A DNA stretch of 64,000 bases. It comes from Hyphochytrium catenoides. Lineage: Eukaryota; Protista; Hyphochytriomycota. The translations under genes and the position numbers were made by a program. Numbering within the stretch: position 1 is the first letter of the stretch; every line of letters starts with the position of its first letter. Of the stretch, positions 25,963 through 40,637 are shown piece after piece. The stretch is from assembly GCA_900088475.1 (NCBI GenBank), contig FLMG01001166.1:62001-126000 (forward strand), written 5' to 3'. The notes beneath the pieces were generated by a model. That model searched no databases and was not told the DNA's origin. It saw only the letters and a program-made list of their open reading frames with translations.

Positions 25963-28900
25963 CTAGACGATAGGGCCGAGAGAAGAACTACTCTGAAGCG
26001 TATTGTCCCCTTCAATTCCTGCCCTAAGAAGCACTTCTGCCTCCTGTCTGTTGAGCCACTTCCCGTTAAGGGGAGTGCTGCTGCCTGGCACTGCCAGCTG
26101 AATACGGGTTGGCAGACGAGAGTCTGCCCAACGGAGGCCTAGACGAATGCGTGGAGGCTGGCTATCTTGCTCCCGATTTACCTCTCCAGCCACATTCACG
26201 GCCGTTAAGAGCTTGTTTGAGTTAGGCACCTTTAATTCGTACCATCGTGTGTGCTGGTTGCCGTCGGCGAGCTGTGAAAGAGGGATTTGAACCTCTCCTA
26301 GCACGTGGTCACGGACGCCCGCAGTGTTATAAACAGCGACCTGCGTCAATGAGATTAGAAGCATGCTCGAATGACCCTCTCTTCCTTCCCTGTCCTTTAT
26401 CCTTCTTAACAATCTGTTGTTCAGCCCTGTGCTTTCTTAAGATCTAGCTTGTTGTGGTTTCTATCTTACCTTAAGTGTCTCCTGTCTGTTAGTACGGTGG
26501 AGCCTGTATGACTCGTTCCAGTGAGGGTTAGAGGTTCCTGCAGAGACTATGGTTCTTTCTACGTGATCGCCAATAGTCAACAAGCAGTAGCAGCTGATGT
26601 GCGAGCTGAGCTCGTCATCTTTCAATCCTGACGCCTGATAGACAGTTAGTAGGAGCTTGTCAGGAGTGTACTCTAGTCTCTTCCCCTCGACGTTGATGTC
26701 ATCGACGGCACAGACTTTTCCTGCAGTCCAAACCCCAGGGCGACCAGGGTCCATTATCAGGACTGAGTTGTTTACATCAAAGGTTTCCATATGAACCAAG
26801 CTCTTCTCCAGCCACCTTTCGTTGTCCAACCATAGAGGAGGAGAGCACACAGGGCTTCCATCCCCAATGCTCTCTTTCATATGAACCTTCAGCTTTCCCT
26901 TCTTAATCCAGGCTACACTAGCCTCTCTCCACTCATGTGGCACAGGTGACTCAATAAGAATGGTCTTCCCAATAAGAGAGAGACTCTCTCTCAGCTTGTG
27001 CTTCATCTTCCTTCCCCTGTACGCAATAAGATTCTTGGTGCCAGTGCTAATGTCAGATTTGGTGGAGTTGACAAGGAAGATAATCCCAAGGCCGAGATTC
27101 TCTAAGATGATGAAAGCCACTAACCGAGGGATGTATCCCAGGCACTCCGTTGACGGCCCGTAGTTCTCATCTGTGCCCCCACAACCAAAATAGGCGTCAA
27201 ACCCTCCAGTACAGGCAACGTAAAGGCCTGGAACAATCATCGCCGCCAGCATTGCCTCAAAGAAGAGAACATTTTCCCATGTGCCTATCCCTAACATTCT
27301 TTGCGGGATAGGTCGCTTGAAGTCAATGCATAGCTTGATCAGATCAAAGCGGAATGAGATTTTGTTGTTCACATAGCCGCAGAGGGCGCAGAATGGCCAA
27401 ACCACAGAGAAGAGCGTGATGTAGGAGAACTGTATGCATTGATGCAGGAGGTCAGAGAAGGAGGACCAGAAAGAGAGACCACCCTCCTCCAGCACCGTAT
27501 CTGCGGTATAGTTATAACTCCTGCACTCGAAGGAAGGCTTCAGGTAGAGAAGAGAGCTCATCTTCTCGTCATAAAGTTCCGCAAAGTCTTGAAGAAGTCT
27601 CTCATGAAGCATCGCGCTAACTTTGGCAAATCTGCTAGACGATGTCGCCTCCACGATGGAGGAGGTTAACGCCACGTCCTGGGAGCTGAGAGGAGGACTA
27701 CTTGCGCTATCCTCTTTCTTCTGTCCCAATGTCGAGGTAGAAGGAACAGCCATTTGCGCCGAAGGCGAGAGAGAGGACATTGGGGATGGCGTCACTCCCG
27801 CTTTATCTCTCCCAGCATTCTCTCCGCCCAAGATCCCTTTTTCTTTAAGCGCTTGCTTCATCTTCAACACGCCTTCGTCGATTGAGTCTGTAGTAACTCT
27901 GACTCTTGAACGAGCGGCAAGGATAGCCTTCCTTCCCAGCCAAGGAAGAAAAGTGTTCACTAACAAGTTAAGTCCTTGCGTTACCACCAGTGGGGTTACA
28001 AAGGCGCTGTCCATGGCTAGCTTAGCTGGAGGATGTGAAGAGGCAAGATGAAGTTCTATCAGCAAGCAATCTCGCAAGCGCATCAAAGAAGAGAGAGTAG
28101 AGCCTAAGGTGTTGGTAAAAGACGCTTTTAAGGAGTTTCCCTGAGGTGATGACACGAAGGTTTTTGCAGGTACCACAGAAAGCAATGAATGAGAAGAAGA
28201 TAGGAAGGAGCAAGTGTGCAGGTGGTTTGTCTTACACTGATCCCATTGCCTTGCATAGTACACCGAGTGGTTGAAAGTGACATACTTATTTGGGTCAATG
28301 TGCTTCATGATAAAAGTTTGAATGTCGCTGCCATAAGGAATGTAAAGAAAGGCGAGCACCAGGAACCAATAGAAGTATCCTAGCCACGTGAACAGAAATG
28401 TCTTCATCACGAAGCCCTTCGTCTTCTCAGCTGGAAGGAGAATAAAGTTAGTTGAGACCGAGAGAAAGGAACGAAGCGGGAAGAAAGGATAGACAGAGCC
28501 AAAGGACAGTATAAGCGATATGCGACGCACTGGGGACAATGACCAAAAGGTTGGAAGAATGAGATGATCAAAAGGAAACATATTATCCATAAGCCTGACA
28601 GGCAAAACACGACATCTGAGAAAAATGAGGTTGCAGGTCAAGGATAGGGACCAAGCCAGGATCTCACCCTGAGTTCTCCAATTCTCCCATTCATTAAACT
28701 TCGCCGCCAGCGCTTCAAAAATGGCAGTGAACAGAATGTCAATGGTAATTCCCAGCACCACTCCCTGGATGAAGATGTAGAACCAGCGGCCAGTTCCTAG
28801 TAGGGGTCTAGAAGACGCAAAGCATCCAAGGAAGCTGGAACACTCTGGACCGTAGATCCTGTTTGTCTCCTCACAATAGCTCTGGCAACTTTTGATGCCC

Positions 28901-31795
28901 AGCTCTTCCTGCACCTGTGCTGTGCACTTTTCTAAACAAACAGAGGAATCCACCCAGTCACAGCGCGGATCCACGCATGCCGGAGTCATTACAGCCACAA
29001 TATACCTAGGCCATCAGGGTCAGCGGCCATCAATAAGCGGTTTAAAGGCGAGGCTTGCCATGAGAAGAAAGACATAGCGATACGAAGAAGAATATACACT
29101 AAGATGGAAGAAGAAGACGGAGGTGGTGAGCACCGACGGCCTCGCCTTTTCTATAGATTGACGCTCCTTACCATTGAATATACAGCGCCAAAAAGACCGC
29201 CAGTATGAGGGTGCAGAAGCTAAAGAAACCGATGTAAACCAGGAACTTAAGCCAACGCTTCTTCGGGTTGTACACTTTTACAGAGATCAAATCGGGCTTC
29301 TCTCCGGGGTCAGCAATGTTGACAGTTTCAATGTGGTCGTGCTTGAAGTTTGGATTCTCATACTCGATCTGGATGGCAGGAGAGAAGAAGAGTATTGGTG
29401 GGTTATGACAGGTAAGGAACATGTCTAAAGAAGAAGATGCAGCGAAAAGAGCTCATCGAAGATTCTATGCAGGTCTGTACTATAGCCAGCCGAGAAAGGC
29501 GGGGCTGCCTGTCTTGAGAGCCAAAATAAGTAGAATAACCAGGCGAAAAGCATTCACAGCTCAAACCAAGGGAAAGGATCGCTGCTGTTCAGTGTGAAGG
29601 AGTTAGTGGGCATAGACCCAGACCCAGATCTTTACCTCGTGAGCCTGTAGCAGACCCCAGGACAGCTTCAACTCATTCAGCTTTCGCCTCCACAATTTGA
29701 TCAGGAGAGGAGCCCATATTAGAGCCATGAACATGCCAAAGAACCTGGAGAATGAGACCACAAGAAGCGTGAGAAAGATGAACGAGCCTGTAACATTTGC
29801 GATTTGGTGCCGAAAGCTACTCCGATAAGAGGTCCCGCTATGAAGGACTATGTAGCCAGTGGCACATTTTGTTTCCTAATCTCTTCTCCGCGTCACTATC
29901 TAAGCTCTTCACCACTACTCCTCGCGTCAGCCCTTCACTCACCCTAGGCCCGCTTGGTATGTTGAATAATCAGCCCAGCGCCAGATAATCCATATTAATG
30001 GTCCCAGTATACTGGGACCAGCCAGTGCCACAGTGTAGAGCCTAATGTAGGCGAAGTAGAATGCAACTTGCAAGCCAAAATGATTCTTGAGACGGTTGAG
30101 AGCCAGATTTTGCACAGCCTTGGACTTGGAGTCCAGACCCACCGACCAGTTCCGGAAGAAAAAGTCATTCAGGCTAACACAGATAAGATAAATTAAACAA
30201 TGCGATAAGCAGCCGGATAAGAGATACGAAGGGAACCGATCAAGTAGGGGCAACCGCGAGGTGATAAGGTAGGAAGAGAGAGACAGGACCAAAGAGATAA
30301 ACAGAGAGGGATGGAAGGAAAGACCGGCCATGTTCTTACCCGGCGTCATGGAGCGGAAAGACTGTCTGGATAATCTCGTCCTTGTTCTCCTCGATTCCTT
30401 GAATGCCAGCTCCTCGAGGTTCCCGCTCCACACTGCGGGTAAGCAGGTGCTGCCAGGCTTCGAGTCTATTCGCTGGAGTCAACACCTCTCCGTTATCCTC
30501 ATAGTCTTCCCCTATCGTTGCGGCCTGTAAGGGATAAGATTATGTGTGATAAGACTACGGTCCGGTCCTGTGGGACTCTTGATCCCCCGACGTCTATTTC
30601 TCCCCCTTGTCCTCATTCAATAGTCTTGGTATTTTCTGCCAGTACTCACTTCCCTAAATTCTTCGTTCCTAGCTCTACGCAGTCGTAACTTCTCGCTTCT
30701 CTCTTGCTTTGATTTCCCTGTCTTACATCTTCCTCTGATAGGTATTCCACAGCCCTTTCCATTCTCAGAAGCTTGTCCTCTCTCGAGATAAGCCATGATG
30801 GGGCATTGAGTAGAACTACGATGAACTCTCTTGAGGTCTGCGTAGCCTCTAGGATAGTCACCTCAATACCAGCTCTAGTGAGATTGGTAATAACCTATAG
30901 AGATGAGGAGATATGACAAAATTAGGTCATGAGCGTAGCTGTACTGTCGCCGATCGCAATCCTGAAGGTTGGAAACCAGATTTCACTTTCTGGGATGAAC
31001 TTGCCCTCTTTAACTGCAACGTAAGGTAATCTCTCTTCAATGTCTCTTACCTCTCGCTGCTGCAGATACTCCTTGGCCGGATCATCACCATGGTTCTTCA
31101 GCACCACTGCAAACTCGTAGGGTAGACGGGGCCGCAAGTTAAGCAGCTCAACAATAGCTGATGCCATCCACACAATGGTGCAGTCTTGCACTGTTGCAGA
31201 GAATTAGTCCAACTCAACTGAATAAAGGGAGGTTTAGAGCAGACATGTAGGAGAGAAAGAGGAGCAAGGTCAAGGCAGCGGAAGAGAGAAGAGGATGCTA
31301 GGGGCAATTGGTCAGGAGGGAGGAGAAGTGACGAAAGACGGAGAAGGACAGGCAGTACCTGCAGTGACTTCCGTAGAGGGTCCATCTTGCTTGCAATCTG
31401 CTGGGAAACCGAAGACAGACGCCTCTTCATATATAGTGCCTGACGATGAGATGGCCTTGCCCGACTTTACTATGTACAGACCATCTACAAATGGCCAGTG
31501 AATAAGGGCAGATAAAGGCCGGTATATAGCTACCAAACTCACCGCACTGCTCCCCTGTCCGTGTGATACTGGCATCCTTCTTATAGTGCCGTACTTGAAC
31601 TATGCGAGTCAGCATCAGCAACTCATCCTCGGGTATATTTTTTAGGCAGGCAACCTCTCTTAGGAATCGTGCCTCGCAGACAGGGTCCTCCAACCTCTTT
31701 GTGATGAGCTCCCCAACACTCGGAAAAAGCCCTGCAAAGCAGAGAATTCCCGATTTCACCTTCTTTAAGCCGCGAACTACCAACTCATTCGCCAT
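25963..31795 (-). CDS. Anoctamin/TMEM16 family channel or scramblase with N-terminal cNMP-binding-like domain and C-terminal C2 domain
   Basis: Anoctamin motifs LKNHFGLQVAFYFAY, NEWENWRTQ/AE..VMKTFLF, IQFSYITLFSVVWP, VNNKISFRFDLIKL, KRPIPQRMLGIGTW. cNMP-type ITRTGEQC/DGLYIVKSG...VFG after splicing. C2 LLLTVYQASGL...NPHWNESY...LGEVQIPLSQL...WYEL. Exon phases checked for the cNMP exons and two anoctamin introns; the exons between about 29000 and 31000 were not fully phase-checked. Confidence 0.85.
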
Positions 31796-33763: not shown

Positions 33764-35941
33764 TTAGTAGGTGTACGTGGGCTGCACGTTGATAGTAACG
33801 GGCTCGGAAGAGTTTAGACGTCTAACCTTAAGCGTGAAGCCTTCATATATCTTTCGGTTCAGCTCCCGATAAATATCTCGGGTGCTTGTCACAGGCTTGC
33901 CTTCGAACTCCACGATGACATCGTACCTCCTTAAACCTGCCCGCTCTGCAGGGCTTGCAGGGCTAATTGAGAAGACAATAACGCCCGCCTTGACGTCGGG
34001 GTACCTTCATTACAAGCAGGAGAGAGGGGGAAGGGGCAGCATGTCTCAGCTACCAGCAAATGAATATCAGTGTGAAGATGATACCGGCTTATTATAACTT
34101 GTAGCTCTGGGTCTCTTTTGTTCAAAGAGATCATCGTCATTCCAACGTACGGCCTGCAAACCCTTCCCGTCCGTCGCAGCTGGTCAATAACCTGAGAGAT
34201 ATGGGCTTTAGGATCTATCGGGCGCTGAGGAAAGAGGCACCACAAGGAAGAGTTGTCTCTCGAAGACTCCTGGTACTGCAGGACCATAATTAACTCGAAA
34301 GCCAATAATGCTAGCATACCGGCCAAGCTGTATCAATGGGAATTGCGAAGCTAACGCCGGACGCACTTGCCAGCTTAATAGCATTAATGCCTATCACCTA
34401 GACGTGAGATAAAAGTGTTAGTGAACAGAGAGCTGTACCTTTGCCGAAGATTGATCACCAGGCACCAAGCAAGGACAAGGGAGACAGAGAGAACAGCACC
34501 TCTCCATCCACATTGATCAAGGGACCTCCCGAGTTTCCAGAGTTGATAGCGGCATCCGTCTGGATGAACTCCCGGTTTGAACGAGGAAGACCAAGCTCGC
34601 TACTGTGCCTTGCAACCGCACTCACTACTCCAACACTGACACTATTCTGCAAAGAGAGAGGGCTACCCAGGGCGATGACCCACTCTCCCACGCGCAAATT
34701 TGCCGAGGAACCTTATAAGCGAATTAGCCTTGCTGTCGCATCAATTTTGAAGGGAGGGGATTACCAGCCAAAACTTGAGGTTGAAGAATGGGATATGCGA
34801 AGAAAGTCCAGGGGAAGTGCCAAAAGGAGCAAAAAGTGCAAAGATTACCGGAGACTCTTATAACATGTAGCTCTTGGTCAGAGCAGGAAGCTATTCAGTT
34901 AAGTTGGGGTCAGCGAGTGTGCTAGACCGCAGAAGAAAGAACTATAGTGATTCTGAAGAAGAAGAGGTACCAAGCTTCATAACAGGTAGCTTCTCGTTTA
35001 CTGGTGGGTCGATCTTGATCAGGGCCAGGTCGGATTGCGTGTCCATGCTATGGACCTTACCAATAAATGTTTCTCCATCACTCCTCGTCACTTCAACCTA
35101 CGACAGCAACTCTTTACCTTCAACAGGTTATTGGAGCAACGGACAAGGGAGACCCACATGCTGTCCCCTTTGTCCAGCTACGACGTGGGCATTTGTGACA
35201 ATAAACCCGTCATCCGAGATAATGAAGCCAGATCCAGTGCTAGCGGTAAGCATGCGGCTAGTCAGATCTGCGGCTAGCAGGTTATCAGAGTTAGACGTGG
35301 AAAAAGCAGGGATAGAGTGAGCAGCAATAGCGCGTTCTCCTAAAGTGAACGTTTGAGGTTTACACGCTGTTTCCAGTGCTTACTTCTTGGAACCAGGATG
35401 TTGACTAGTGCTGGAAAGGCTTTCTCCGTAGCATCCGCAATGAAGTTCCTCGAGTGATAGCCTGGAGGCTTGGATGCCGCTTGTGGCGCGATTTTCTGTG
35501 CGCCTCTCGGATGTGCTTCTTCTGAAAGTACCTGTCGGTCATACCCTTAAACAAAGGATATCAAGGCAGCGTAGTGGTTGTCAGTTCGTCTCATAGTGCT
35601 TTAAATTTCTTGATCGGTAGAAAGTGAGATAGAAGAGAATGACCGAAGTCCGCCAAGCATAATTACATAGACGAACAGCTAATAGTTGTGCTAGTGTTAC
35701 AGTCTTCTTTACCTGTTGCTCCCAAGCCGATCAAGCCAAGAAGAGTAAGAAGCACGCCCTTCCCCTTTCGATCAGATCCCTCTCTCCCTGAAGGGTTCAC
35801 CCAAAGGGCAGTGCATGGTCTAATGGCGGCCACAAAGCTCGCTTGCTGTCGCCTTGCCATAAGTTGCCTCCAAGACCCATGCGCCTGAGGTTCGAAGAGT
35901 TGACGCCGGACGCCATGAGATAGAAGAACCCTCTTGAGCAT
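33764..35941 (-). CDS. HtrA/DegP serine protease with PDZ domain, probably mitochondrial (HTRA2/Deg14-like)
   Basis: [19 protein letters not shown] (His), SDLALIKI (Asp), [16 protein letters not shown] (Ser), GVSFAIPID, and [22 protein letters not shown]. Arg-rich N-terminus followed by a hydrophobic segment. Confidence 0.92.
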
Positions 35942-38812: not shown

Positions 38813-39498
38813 CCTTACTGCGCTGATTGTTAGTCTAGGCGCTCTCGCCCTATAGCTAGTGAAGCACTTCAAGGTGATACTCTTGGCCTGTTGCTCCTCT
38901 CTCTGCCATAGAGCTCTCTACGGATGGCTCATAAATAAGTCTTCAGTAGGCCTCGTCAATCAGACGATAGTCCCAGGCAGAGAGTTGTCAGTAAAGCTGA
39001 AAAAAACCAGGTTCTTTCTTGAGATTCTGAACTGCAGATCTATGAGCAACAGATCTCTCTTCATGCCGATACGGCTACTGTACCTGCTGAACGAATTACA
39101 GATCCAGAGATAATTTCTCCGCGATAAGCAGCCAGAGACATGTGAATATCCATGATAGACCCTGAGTAGGCAAAGGATTATCAATGTTAGCGACCGATTG
39201 TGATTCACAAATTGATCTGATATGACCTATGGAGAAGAGGATTTGTTGTGAAGCTGATGAGAAGTGTCGGCGCAACGCCCTGCGGCACGTTGATTCTTCT
39301 CAGCGGGCATCAGCAATCTTCTTCGCCGACGAAGCTCCCAGTCGAAGGTCACGCACCACCACCTGCGAGATGATTCATGGTGCCGATTAGAAGCTAGTCT
39401 ACAGGTTGCAAGTTCTTCCCACACAAGGAGCCGCTATGAGTGTGGATGGACTGAGTCCGATGAGCGAATTGTCTGCACGTTGCTGAAATTCGTATTGG

Positions 39499-39557
39499 NN
39501 NNNNNNNNNNNNNNNNNNNNNNNNNNNNNNNNNNNNNNNNNNNNNNNNNNNNNNNNN
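39499..39557. other. Assembly gap (59 N)
   Basis: Run of n. Confidence 0.99.
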
Positions 39558-40637
39558 GTAGTGAACGACAGTTGCATGTAGACCTTGATGAAGCTACATA
39601 CTTTCAACGGGTGCAGAAGGTATTCCACCAGCTTGACGTCCGCACGGCTTTCGCGACTCATGGGCAGGTTGAAGCCGCCCTGAAGACTATTGAAGACCAT
39701 AGTAAGTCAAGACTTGGAGGTTTCCTGCCACTCAATGTATCGTAATACTCCGTCTTCATAGGGAAGGGTCTTGTTCGTCCAAGTGCCGACACTCTTTTTC
39801 ATGCGACGAAGCTGAAGAACGCCATCGTCCATCCCGATACAGGTATAAGGACGCGCATTTTGCTCTTCTCCTCCGATGTTGCTAAACCTTCTTTATTTCT
39901 CAGGGGAAAAGGTCCTTCTGCCTCTGAGAGTCAGCATGATCGTGCCGATGAACCTTATTCTGGACGCTGGGATGATGTCTGCGTCGACTCTGTCTTCTAC
40001 TGTCTTCTGGCAGTGGCTCAATCAGACCTATAACGCCCTTCACTACTACGCTAATCGGAACGCATCCAATCATGATACCTCTACCCAGCGTTTAGTAGCC
40101 TACCTTGCCGCAACCGGAAGCTCAGTGTGGGCGGCTTTAAAAGTACGGAGGCTAAGCGATCAGGCACCTGCGGCTGCCCGCTGGGGCCCGTACCTTAGGC
40201 GCCTTGGGCCATTTGCAGCTGTGGCTGCGGCAGACGTCCTGAACCTTCCCTTGATGAGACAGAGTGAGTTCTTACATGGTGTGGATTTGTTTGACGAGAA
40301 CGGAAGGTATGTAGGGAAGAGTAAGAGGGCTGGTGTCGTAGCTGTCAGCTCCTGTGTGGCAGGCCGAGTCTTTGCCGCGGCACCTATTCTCTGCATCCCT
40401 CCCTTGATAATGCAGAAGCTGGAAGGGAAGGAGCTGCTGAAGCGCAGACCAGTGCTTCGTATTCCCATACTACTCTCGTTGGTAGGAGTGATGATTCAGT
40501 TCTCGGTCCCACTAACCTTCGGGTTATTCAAGCAAACGGCGCAGGTTAATGTGAGATATTTAGAGCCCCAATTTAGACGCGTCATTCGAGACGATGGGCT
40601 CTTGATGAAGTATGCAACTTATAATAAAGGCATATAG
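39558..40637 (+). CDS. SFXN: Sideroflexin (mitochondrial serine/tricarboxylate carrier); start lies in or before the N gap
   Basis: LDEATYFQRVQKVF..LDVR, AIVHPDT/GEKVLLPLRVS, FWQWLNQTYNA..YANRNAS, PFAAVAAADVLNLPLMRQSE, YNKGI*. Introns at about 39702-39761 and 39843-39903. Confidence 0.92.

What the first reader, a model, noticed from the sequence alone, without database searches (positions are those of the whole stretch)
27340..27990. Canonical intramembrane Ca2+ ligands of this anoctamin are partly lost
Seen: TM7 reads FSDLLHQCIQF, TM8 NNKISFRFD, TM6 QGLNLLVNTFLP. Known (recalled from TMEM16A): PEYMEMIIQF, NNIIEIRLD and NNLFEIGIP supply the acidic ligands. By-eye alignment gives second TM7 Glu to His, TM8 Glu to Ser and TM6 Glu to Asn or absent, with two Asp retained. 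Inference: direct Ca2+ gating is degraded, and control may have moved to the fused domains or to pH via the His.
Basis: partly seen in the sequence, partly recalled or inferred. Interest (0 to 1): 0.8.

Follow-up and report, generated by a model that had tools for sequence, protein, structure and literature searches.

The report
Calcium-site-remodelled TMEM16 of oomycete lineage
This intact gene encodes a TMEM16 (anoctamin) membrane protein in which three of the five acidic calcium-binding residues are replaced by Asn, His and Ser; all 27 water-mould relatives share the change, so it probably works without calcium, much like yeast Ist2.

Summary
The three motifs translate exactly as quoted and lie in one uninterrupted exon of a 12-exon minus-strand gene (1291 aa model).

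Ungapped HMMER alignments to nhTMEM16 and afTMEM16, plus two independent multiple alignments, give these equivalences:
- alpha6 E452/E654 to N671
- alpha7 D503/E702 to D839 (kept)
- alpha7 E506/E705 to H842
- alpha8 E535/E734 to S871
- alpha8 D539/D738 to D875 (kept)

This is fixed remodelling, not decay. In 27 oomycete orthologues the positions are N (27/27), D (28/28 with the query), H (27/28, one Arg), A (26, Ser in the query) and D (27/27). The group is one well-supported clade nested among relatives that keep all five acidic residues.

The closest precedent is yeast IST2 (2025). It has also lost three of five acidic ligands, and a Lys at the same alpha7 position replaces Ca2+; it scrambles lipids constitutively.

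The C2 domain lacks most Ca2+-binding aspartates. The cNMP-like domain scores below the Pfam threshold and lacks the phosphate-binding-cassette Glu and Arg. A pH role for the His remains open.

The scan had already noted similar site losses in two other TMEM16 genes of this genome. I class this as a new variant of a known kind, of moderate interest.

The parts
25963..31795 (-). Whole gene: 12 exons, 1291-aa model. Order of domains: CNB-like domain, TMEM16 core, linker, C2.
   Evidence: tblastn with full-length orthologue P0002. GT-AG junction search. The assembled CDS is 3876 nt with a single terminal stop. Pfam Anoctamin 124.5 bits and C2 30.3 bits. The exon 2/3 junction (31359|31190) is the least certain.
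26470..28025 (-). Exon 11: alpha6 through alpha10, the linker and the first half of C2, in one open frame.
27943..27978 (-). alpha6 motif QGLNLLVNTFLP. N667 (27967-27969) matches nhTMEM16 N448 / TMEM16A N650. N671 (27955-27957) replaces E452/E654.
27454..27954 (-). 167-residue Ser-rich insert between the alpha6 and alpha7 ligand positions (about 50 residues in nhTMEM16).
   Evidence: Shared with orthologues. The equivalent part of the P0002 model has pLDDT below 50. Composition.
27427..27459 (-). alpha7 motif FSDLLHQCIQF. D839 (27451-27453) matches D503/E702 and is kept. H842 (27442-27444) replaces E506/E705.
27343..27369 (-). alpha8 motif NNKISFRFD. N867 matches N730. S871 (27355-27357) replaces E535/E734. 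D875 (27343-27345) matches D539/D738 and is kept.
26470..26673 (-). C2 domain, first half. Loop 1 reads ...ISCYC, with Ser where Syt1 has D178.
   Evidence: Pfam C2. Alignments.
26227..26340 (-). C2 domain, second half, after a 129-nt intron. Loop 3 reads VYNTAG...D, with N and A where Syt1 has D230 and D232.
31051..31705 (-). CNB-like (cyclic-nucleotide-binding homology) domain spread over exons 1-3. Its phosphate-binding cassette lacks the Glu and the Arg.
   Evidence: The query model scores 58.8 bits against the orthologue profile A1. A1 against PDB: PKG CNB domains, E 1.8e-11. Pfam PF00027 is below the cut-off in 14/14 orthologues. Single exons of the query give no hit.

Best explanation
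The gene encodes a TMEM16-family protein of the scramblase-like branch; its nearest solved relatives are nhTMEM16, afTMEM16 and TMEM16K. It belongs to an oomycete-lineage orthogroup with the architecture CNB-like domain, TMEM16 core, C2.

In this orthogroup the two-Ca2+ regulatory site between alpha6, alpha7 and alpha8 was rebuilt once and then fixed. The alpha6 Glu became Asn, the second alpha7 acid became His (Arg in one orthologue), and the alpha8 Glu became Ala (Ser here). The alpha7 Asp and alpha8 Asp were kept.

Shown: the substitutions, their near-invariance, their single origin within canonical-site relatives, and the retained TMEM16 fold.

Inferred: the pocket no longer acts as a high-affinity Ca2+ switch. 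Instead a (protonated) His/Arg paired with the two remaining Asp, together with Asn hydrogen bonds, holds alpha6 against alpha7/alpha8 without Ca2+. This is what Lys443 does in yeast IST2. The protein would then be constitutively active, or regulated by something other than Ca2+ at this site.

The C2 and CNB-like domains lack their canonical ligand residues. They more likely serve membrane targeting, tethering or protein contacts than Ca2+ or cNMP sensing.
For: Residue equivalences.

Conservation over 27 orthologues from Achlya, Aphanomyces, Pythium and Globisporangium: N 27/27, D 28/28, H 27/28 (R once), A 26 plus S, D 27/27. Arg sits at the N730-equivalent position in 15 sequences, among them every named Pythium and Globisporangium entry.

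Tree: the query is sister to all named oomycete orthologues (SH-aLRT 99). The next branch out is P0177, which has all five acidic residues (SH-aLRT 97). The remodelled group needs only one change on the tree.

Fold: an AF2 model of orthologue P0002:300-1060 has pLDDT 80.7 and pTM 0.77. It aligns to nhTMEM16 with Z 34.3, rmsd 2.6 A over 426 residues (Foldseek).

Precedent: in IST2 three of five acidic residues are substituted, K443 at the nhTMEM16 E506 position replaces Ca2+ through a bifurcated salt bridge, and scrambling is Ca2+-independent (PMC12618243). Gln mutants of the TMEM16A pocket open more easily in zero Ca2+ (PMC7170896).

Recurrence: of 103 representative relatives, 38 have fewer than five acidic ligands, and 24 of those carry K/R/H at a ligand position. 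None of the 65 full-site sequences has a basic residue at the N730-equivalent position.
Against: No functional data exist for any member, and no RNA run was listed for this gene.

His is not Lys: its charge depends on its local pKa. The alpha6 Glu, which is one salt-bridge partner in IST2, is Asn here, so the geometry must differ.

Two Asp, three Asn and one His could still bind one divalent ion weakly.

I could not inspect side-chain geometry, because model coordinates are not exposed. The modelled protein is an orthologue only 39% identical to the query overall.

The sample of relatives is biased towards sequences close to the query.
Confidence: 0.6

Rival explanations
1. Proton switch. H842 titrates near cytosolic pH. 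When protonated it bridges D839/D875 and mimics bound Ca2+; when neutral it releases alpha6. Activity would then be gated by intracellular pH instead of Ca2+.
For: His is kept in 27/28 sequences rather than Lys or Arg, which would fit a need for titratability. TMEM16F and TMEM16A are already modulated by protonation of pocket residues (PMC7754671; PMC7170896).
Against: One orthologue tolerates Arg at this position (P0004). The 15 sequences with Arg at the N730-equivalent position, among them every named Pythium and Globisporangium entry, carry a fixed positive charge in the pocket. A His next to two buried carboxylates may stay protonated over the whole physiological range. No pKa estimate or experiment is available.
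Confidence: 0.2
2. Residual or altered metal site. The remaining D839, D875, N667, N671, N867 and H842 still bind one divalent ion, either low-affinity Ca2+ or, because of the His, a softer ion such as Zn2+ or Mn2+. That ion would regulate the protein.
For: Two carboxylates, three amides and an imidazole remain at ligand positions and are strictly conserved. This combination resembles transition-metal sites (general knowledge, not tested here).
Against: In 15 orthologues an Arg replaces the N730-equivalent ligand, which would repel a cation. In IST2 the comparable remodelling removes Ca2+ dependence.
Confidence: 0.12
3. Control has passed to the fused domains acting as canonical sensors: Ca2+ through C2 and/or cAMP/cGMP through the N-terminal domain.
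For: The architecture co-occurs with the remodelled site in all full-length orthologues. The nearest full-site sister shows no CNB-like domain and no C2 in its locus. The EF-hand paralogues examined keep the full site.
Against: C2: D230->N throughout the clade. The query has S, N and A at D178, D230 and D232. CNB-like domain: below the Pfam cut-off in 14/14. The cassette Glu is replaced (Val in the orthologue consensus, Phe in the query) and the cassette Arg is absent from the query under every splice option.
Confidence: 0.07
4. The protein has lost transport activity and serves only as a scaffold or tether, or the gene is decaying.
For: Loss of ligands alone would fit this. The query's C2 and CNB-like domains are more degenerate than those of the named oomycete orthologues.
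Against: All 12 exons are open, with GT-AG introns and a single terminal stop. alpha6-alpha8 are among the best-conserved segments across the orthogroup. IST2 shows that a remodelled site is compatible with full scramblase activity.
Confidence: 0.05

Closest known systems
Saccharomyces cerevisiae IST2 (TMEM16 homologue; PDB 9hhe/9qja; PMC12618243)
   Same: TMEM16 fold. Three of the five acidic Ca2+ ligands are substituted. A side chain that can carry positive charge sits at the nhTMEM16 E506 position. The alpha8 Asp (D539 equivalent) is kept. Both carry an extra C-terminal region with membrane-binding potential.
   Different: His (rarely Arg) instead of Lys. The set of lost ligands differs: here the alpha6 Glu is lost and the alpha7 Asp kept, whereas IST2 keeps the alpha6 Glu and loses both alpha7 acids. 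The lineage is independent, nested among stramenopile relatives with full sites (IST2 itself was not in the tree). It has a folded C2 and a CNB-like domain instead of a disordered polybasic tail with an OSH6-binding motif. Activity is untested.
Fungal scramblases nhTMEM16 and afTMEM16, and human TMEM16K
   Same: Closest solved relatives by sequence (E 4e-14 to 2.5e-12) and by fold (Z 30.8-34.3). The NN..x...D and IQF motifs are conserved.
   Different: They keep all five acidic ligands and are activated by Ca2+. They have no CNB-like or C2 domain and no long alpha6-alpha7 insert.
   Same: Same family, and the same five ligand positions (E654, E702, E705, E734, D738; named in PMC7170896).
   Different: A more distant branch (E about 1e-7) that acts as a Ca2+-gated Cl- channel. 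The query has N, D, H, S, D at these positions.
Oomycete EF-hand TMEM16 paralogues (for example P0157 Pythium insidiosum, P0194 'Anoctamin-10' Phytophthora citrophthora)
   Same: Same organisms and the same protist TMEM16 subfamily, with the FVTPLVVTQ.LN alpha6 signature.
   Different: The members examined keep the acidic ligands (alpha6 E, alpha7 D..D, alpha8 NN..E...D). Most carry a C-terminal EF-hand instead of C2.
CNB-homology domains that do not bind cyclic nucleotides (KCNH/EAG-type CNBHD; from general knowledge, not tested here)
   Same: A CNB-type domain fused to a membrane transport protein, with the phosphate-binding-cassette residues lost.
   Different: No sequence relationship beyond the CNB fold was examined. 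It is fused to a TMEM16 rather than to a voltage-gated channel.

Membership tests
TMEM16 / anoctamin (Pfam PF04547) | Significant match to the family profile | tested here: met
   Query ORF scores 124.5 bits against a cut-off of 28. Orthologue P0002 scores 226 bits over profile positions 1-459.
TMEM16 / anoctamin (Pfam PF04547) | Ten-helix TMEM16 fold | tested here: met
   AF2 model of orthologue P0002:300-1060 (pLDDT 80.7) against nhTMEM16: Z 34.3, rmsd 2.6 A over 426 residues. The query itself was not modelled because its core spans several exons.
TMEM16 / anoctamin (Pfam PF04547) | Five acidic Ca2+ ligands on alpha6-alpha8 | tested here: not met
   The query has N671, D839, H842, S871 and D875, so 2 of 5 are acidic. 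This feature defines the Ca2+-activated members, not the fold family; IST2 also lacks it.
TMEM16 / anoctamin (Pfam PF04547) | Ca2+-activated scrambling or conductance | not testable with these tools
   Needs reconstitution or electrophysiology.
IST2-like Ca2+-independent TMEM16 scramblases (functional class) | Three or more of the five acidic ligands substituted | tested here: met
   Three substituted. IST2 also has three.
IST2-like Ca2+-independent TMEM16 scramblases (functional class) | Cationic side chain at the nhTMEM16 E506 position replacing Ca2+ | tested here: inconclusive
   His in 27/28 and Arg in 1/28. The position matches by ungapped alignment, but the charge state of the His and its contacts are unknown.
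IST2-like Ca2+-independent TMEM16 scramblases (functional class) | alpha6 Glu and alpha8 Asp retained as salt-bridge partners | tested here: not met
   The alpha8 Asp is retained (D875) but the alpha6 Glu is Asn (N671). The alpha7 Asp (D839) is retained instead.
IST2-like Ca2+-independent TMEM16 scramblases (functional class) | Constitutive, Ca2+-independent lipid scrambling | not testable with these tools
   Needs a proteoliposome assay.
Ca2+-binding C2 domain (synaptotagmin/PKC type) | Five acidic loop ligands (Syt1 C2A D172, D178, D230, D232, D238) | tested here: not met
   The C2 fold family is met (Pfam). For the ligands, Aphanomyces P0159 has M, D, N, D, E by HMMER alignment to 2r83. The query has S, N, A and D at D178, D230, D232 and D238 by orthogroup MSA.
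Cyclic-nucleotide-binding domain (Pfam PF00027) | Match above the curated cut-off | tested here: not met
   Best orthologue scores 24.1 bits against a cut-off of 27.5; all 14 scanned match only below it. Single exons of the query give no hit. Homology to PKG/PKA CNB domains is clear only at profile level (E 1.8e-11).
Cyclic-nucleotide-binding domain (Pfam PF00027) | Phosphate-binding cassette Glu (FGE) and Arg (R[ST]A) | tested here: not met
   The Glu position is Val in the orthologue consensus and Phe in the query. No Arg is encoded in the query's cassette stretch in any splice alternative. Some Pythium orthologues keep an Arg nearby.

The most novel reading that the evidence does not exclude
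The strictly conserved His-Asp-Asp-Asn pocket is a new sensor rather than a passive Ca2+ mimic. It would be a proton (or Zn2+/Mn2+) binding switch that gates a TMEM16 scramblase or channel, working with a long Ser-rich alpha6-alpha7 insert and ligand-blind CNB-like and C2 modules. That would make this oomycete-lineage family the first TMEM16 proteins with a changed activating ligand.
Probability: 0.15. Interest if true: 0.75.

Novelty: new variant of a known kind. Interest (0 to 1): 0.45.

Why it matters
TMEM16 proteins are textbook Ca2+-activated channels and scramblases. Yeast IST2 (2025) was the first member shown structurally to have replaced Ca2+ with a built-in positive side chain.

This gene shows an independent, deeply conserved version of that rebuild in the oomycete lineage. 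It uses His (Arg in one orthologue) at the same alpha7 position but a different set of surviving ligands, in a domain architecture I found no description of.

Across the fetched relatives, 38 of 103 representatives have incomplete sites, and 24 of those carry K/R/H at a ligand position. This suggests Ca2+-independent TMEM16s may be common in protists.

The family occurs in Aphanomyces and Pythium, which are animal and plant pathogens. Basic knowledge of its role, possibly lipid scrambling at membrane contact sites, would have practical relevance.

It also offers a natural test of which pocket charges are needed to hold alpha6 in the active position.

Tried and rejected
- The first word-indexed protein search with the whole 845-aa ORF found nothing. 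The query's first 500 residues include intron read-through. Restricting to residues 455-650 worked.
- No RNA sequencing run was listed for the gene, so read laying was not used and the splice sites rest on homology and GT-AG consensus only. The exon 2/3 junction is uncertain.
- I could not print a direct residue alignment to IST2. It ranks 9th-10th among PDB hits for alpha6 (E 0.02) and only five alignments are shown. The H842-to-K443 equivalence is therefore transitive, through nhTMEM16 E506 (plus the paper).
- Model coordinates are not exposed, so side-chain distances in the pocket could not be measured.
- A Tudor/Agenet-like domain between alpha10 and C2, proposed in earlier notes, was not established. 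The query segment has no Pfam hit, and orthologues give only faint Agenet hits (E 0.002-0.1).
- Pseudogene or assembly artefact: rejected (open exons, conserved orthogroup).
- OSCA/TMEM63 or TMC identity: rejected (Pfam Anoctamin and fold Z 34).
- The third Ca2+ site at alpha2/alpha10 was not analysed.
- Two literature searches for oomycete TMEM16 or anoctamin studies found no study of oomycete TMEM16 proteins.
Full report
**1. What is in the sequence**

The region lies on the minus strand, inside a multi-exon eukaryotic gene. The ORF 26461-28998 carries Pfam Anoctamin (124.5 bits) and the start of a C2 domain. Neighbouring ORFs carry the Anoctamin N-terminus and the rest of C2.

I built the gene model from two sources: tblastn with a full-length orthologue (P0002, 1339 aa), and a search for frame-preserving GT-AG junctions scored against orthologues. 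The result is a 12-exon model spanning 31795->25963, with a 3876-nt CDS, 1291 aa and one terminal stop. Most donor sites read GTAAGA or GTGAGT. Only the exon 2/3 junction is uncertain.

All lie in exon 11 (28025->26470), which is open throughout, so no splice or frame artefact is involved. No RNA run was listed, so expression and splicing are unconfirmed.

**2. Are these the Ca2+ ligand positions?**

HMMER against PDB sequences aligns alpha7-alpha8 of the query without gaps to nhTMEM16 (4wis 489-586) and afTMEM16. Counting along that alignment:
- query D aligns with D503
- H aligns with E506
- S aligns with E535
- D aligns with D539

These are exactly the published ligand numbers (E506 is named in PMC12618243).

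The long alpha6-alpha7 insert kept phmmer from reaching alpha6. I therefore built a 25-sequence alpha6 alignment (A3) and searched the PDB with its profile. It aligns without gaps to nhTMEM16 429-463, where column 20 is N448 and column 24 is E452. The numbering is consistent with the PDB mutant names R432A and A444P. The window has Asn in both columns.

Two independent multiple alignments place the same residues in the same columns (104 sequences with MAFFT E-INS-i; 62 sequences with the alignment tool).

In TMEM16A numbering (the pocket residues E654, E702, E705, E734 and D738 are listed in PMC7170896) the query reads N671, D839, H842, S871, D875. N667 and N867 sit at the N650 and N730 positions. 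No alternative acidic residue lies nearby in alpha6, alpha7 or alpha8.

**3. Decay or remodelling?**

An exhaustive HMMER search of 1.84 billion representatives and a word-indexed search seeded with P0002 recovered an orthogroup. It includes Achlya hypogyna, four Aphanomyces species, Pythium oligandrum, P. brassicae, P. insidiosum, Globisporangium splendens and unnamed assemblies. The query is only 34-39% identical to them overall.

Across 27 orthologues plus the query, the ligand columns read:
- alpha6 N650 equivalent: N 27/27
- alpha6 E654 equivalent: N 27/27
- alpha7 E702 equivalent: D 28/28
- alpha7 E705 equivalent: H 27, R 1
- alpha8 N730 equivalent: N 12, R 15 (the R group includes every named Pythium and Globisporangium entry)
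- alpha8 E734 equivalent: A 26, S 1 (the query)
- alpha8 D738 equivalent: D 27/27

A maximum-likelihood tree (62 rows, 717 columns, LG+C20 PMSF, quick search) puts the query as sister to all the named oomycete orthologues (SH-aLRT 99). The next branch out is P0177 (SH-aLRT 97), which has E, D, D, N, E, D. The remodelled group needs a single change on the tree and is nested among lineages with full sites.

The site was therefore rebuilt once, before the query's lineage split from these oomycetes, and has been held nearly invariant since. That is the signature of a maintained function, not of relaxed constraint.

**4. The fold is retained**

An AlphaFold2 model of orthologue P0002:300-1060, built with a 62-sequence alignment, has mean pLDDT 80.7 and pTM 0.77. 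The helices score above 90, and only the alpha6-alpha7 insert falls below 50.

Foldseek ranks nhTMEM16, TMEM16K and afTMEM16 first, followed by TMEM16F and TMEM16A. VIA-align gives Z 34.3, rmsd 2.6 A over 426 residues to nhTMEM16. The protein is a bona fide TMEM16 of the scramblase-like branch. Coordinates are not exposed, so I could not examine pocket geometry.

**5. Mechanistic reading**

Two published results bear directly on this.

(a) IST2 of S. cerevisiae (PMC12618243) has three of the five acidic residues substituted. [quoted passage not shown] The protein is a constitutively active, Ca2+-independent ER scramblase.

(b) In TMEM16A, stepwise Gln substitution of the five pocket residues makes the channel progressively easier to activate in zero Ca2+ (PMC7170896).

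The query clade also has three of five substituted, and it has His (Arg in P0004) at exactly the E506 position. The 15 sequences with Arg at the N730-equivalent position, among them every named Pythium and Globisporangium entry, add a further positive charge.

Among 103 representative relatives with complete columns, 65 keep all five acidic residues and 38 do not. Of those 38, 24 carry K, R or H at a ligand position. None of the 65 full-site sequences has a basic residue at the N730 position. This sample is biased towards relatives of the query and depends on the alignment.

The best-supported reading is that the pocket neutralises itself and holds alpha6 without Ca2+. This part is inference. 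His differs from Lys, and the surviving acid pair differs too: alpha7 Asp plus alpha8 Asp here, against alpha6 Glu plus alpha8 Asp in IST2. A pH-titratable switch, or a weak or altered metal site, cannot be excluded.

**6. The fused domains**

C2. HMMER aligns Aphanomyces P0159 C2 to synaptotagmin-1 C2A (2r83). The result is D172->M, D178 kept, D230->N, D232 kept, D238->E. In the orthogroup alignment the query has S at D178, N at D230, A at D232 and D at D238. D230->N holds throughout the clade. Canonical Ca2+ binding by this C2 is therefore unlikely, least of all in the query.

N-terminal domain. A 14-sequence profile hits the CNB domains of PKG and PKA (E 1.8e-11 to 1e-5). All 14 members match PF00027, but only below the gathering cut-off (best 24.1 against 27.5 bits). 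The query model matches the orthologue profile at 58.8 bits.

In the phosphate-binding cassette, the Glu of FGE is Val in the orthologue consensus and Phe in the query. The query encodes no Arg anywhere in the cassette stretch under any splice alternative. Some Pythium orthologues retain an Arg nearby.

A correlation does hold. Every full-length orthologue combines this architecture with the remodelled site. The EF-hand paralogues examined keep the full site. The gene of the nearest full-site sister, P0177, was reassembled from two adjacent gene calls in L001. It shows no CNB-like domain by profile comparison and no C2 in the downstream ORFs.

By analogy with IST2's plasma-membrane-binding tail, a C-terminal C2 on a long linker could tether or target the protein. 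This is speculation.

**7. Comparison with what is known, and novelty**

Two literature searches found no study of oomycete TMEM16 or anoctamin proteins.

The phenomenon itself is known from IST2: a TMEM16 with a rebuilt Ca2+ site and a positive side chain at the E506 position. This is an independent occurrence with a different residue solution and a domain architecture I found no description of. I class it as a new variant of a known kind.

Earlier notes of this scan report similar findings in two other TMEM16 genes of the same genome. s1-341959 describes a CNBD-TMEM16-C2 paralogue with a lost Ca2+ switch. s1-333886 describes a Lys-filled site likened to Ist2. I did not test those genes. They agree with my reading and mean the scan has seen this before on other DNA. 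I reached the IST2 parallel through my own paper search before seeing s1-333886.

**8. Verdict**

- Observation: confirmed.
- Interpretation: partly supported. Ca2+ gating at this site is very probably lost, but by conserved remodelling rather than degradation. The transfer of control to C2 or the cNMP-like domain is unsupported. The pH idea remains open.
- Interest: 0.45.

Noticed in passing
window 27454-27954 (-): A 167-residue Ser-rich (28 Ser) insert sits between the alpha6 and alpha7 ligand positions, directly after the gating helix; nhTMEM16 has about 50 residues there. Orthologues share an insert of 170-190 residues or more, and it is disordered in the AF2 model. It could be a phospho-regulatory loop.
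   Followed up: partly
orthologues P0164, P0166-P0176, P0003, P0005 (alpha8): 15 orthologues, among them every named Pythium and Globisporangium entry, carry Arg at the N730-equivalent ligand position (motif [CA]RN..A.RFD). This is a second positive charge in the former Ca2+ pocket. Achlya, Aphanomyces and the query keep Asn.
   Followed up: partly
103 representative relatives: 38 of 103 representative TMEM16 relatives have fewer than five acidic ligands. 24 of them have K/R/H at a ligand position, for example a four-member clade (P0030, P0033, P0044, P0101) with Lys at the E734 equivalent. Incomplete Ca2+ sites may be common in protist TMEM16s.
   Followed up: partly
window about 28800-29005 (-): A Cys-rich loop encoded at the start of exon 9 (10 Cys) is shared with P0002. 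It probably faces outward and is disulphide-bonded; I know of no counterpart in the solved TMEM16 structures.
   Followed up: no
L001 22-3168 and 3693-6167: The public gene calls split one TMEM16 gene (the nearest full-site sister, P0177) in two. The upstream 1048-aa product ends with Anoctamin profile positions 2-66, after about 977 residues with no Pfam domain at E<0.01.
   Followed up: partly
window 26656-27084 (-): The linker between alpha10 and C2 was called Tudor/SH3-like in earlier notes. The query segment has no Pfam hit, and orthologues give only faint Agenet hits (E 0.002-0.1).
   Followed up: partly
P0153 (Pythium insidiosum, 1686 aa): UniRef names this cluster member 'pantothenate kinase', and its C-terminus aligns differently from the C2 of the other orthologues. 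It is probably a chimeric gene model in the public annotation.
   Followed up: no
window about 39450-39640: The window holds 59 N in all. A 21-codon unknown stretch inside ORF 39434-39700 marks an assembly gap there. ORF fragments at 34455-34697 (-) resemble an HtrA/Deg serine protease (GNSGGPL motif).
   Followed up: no
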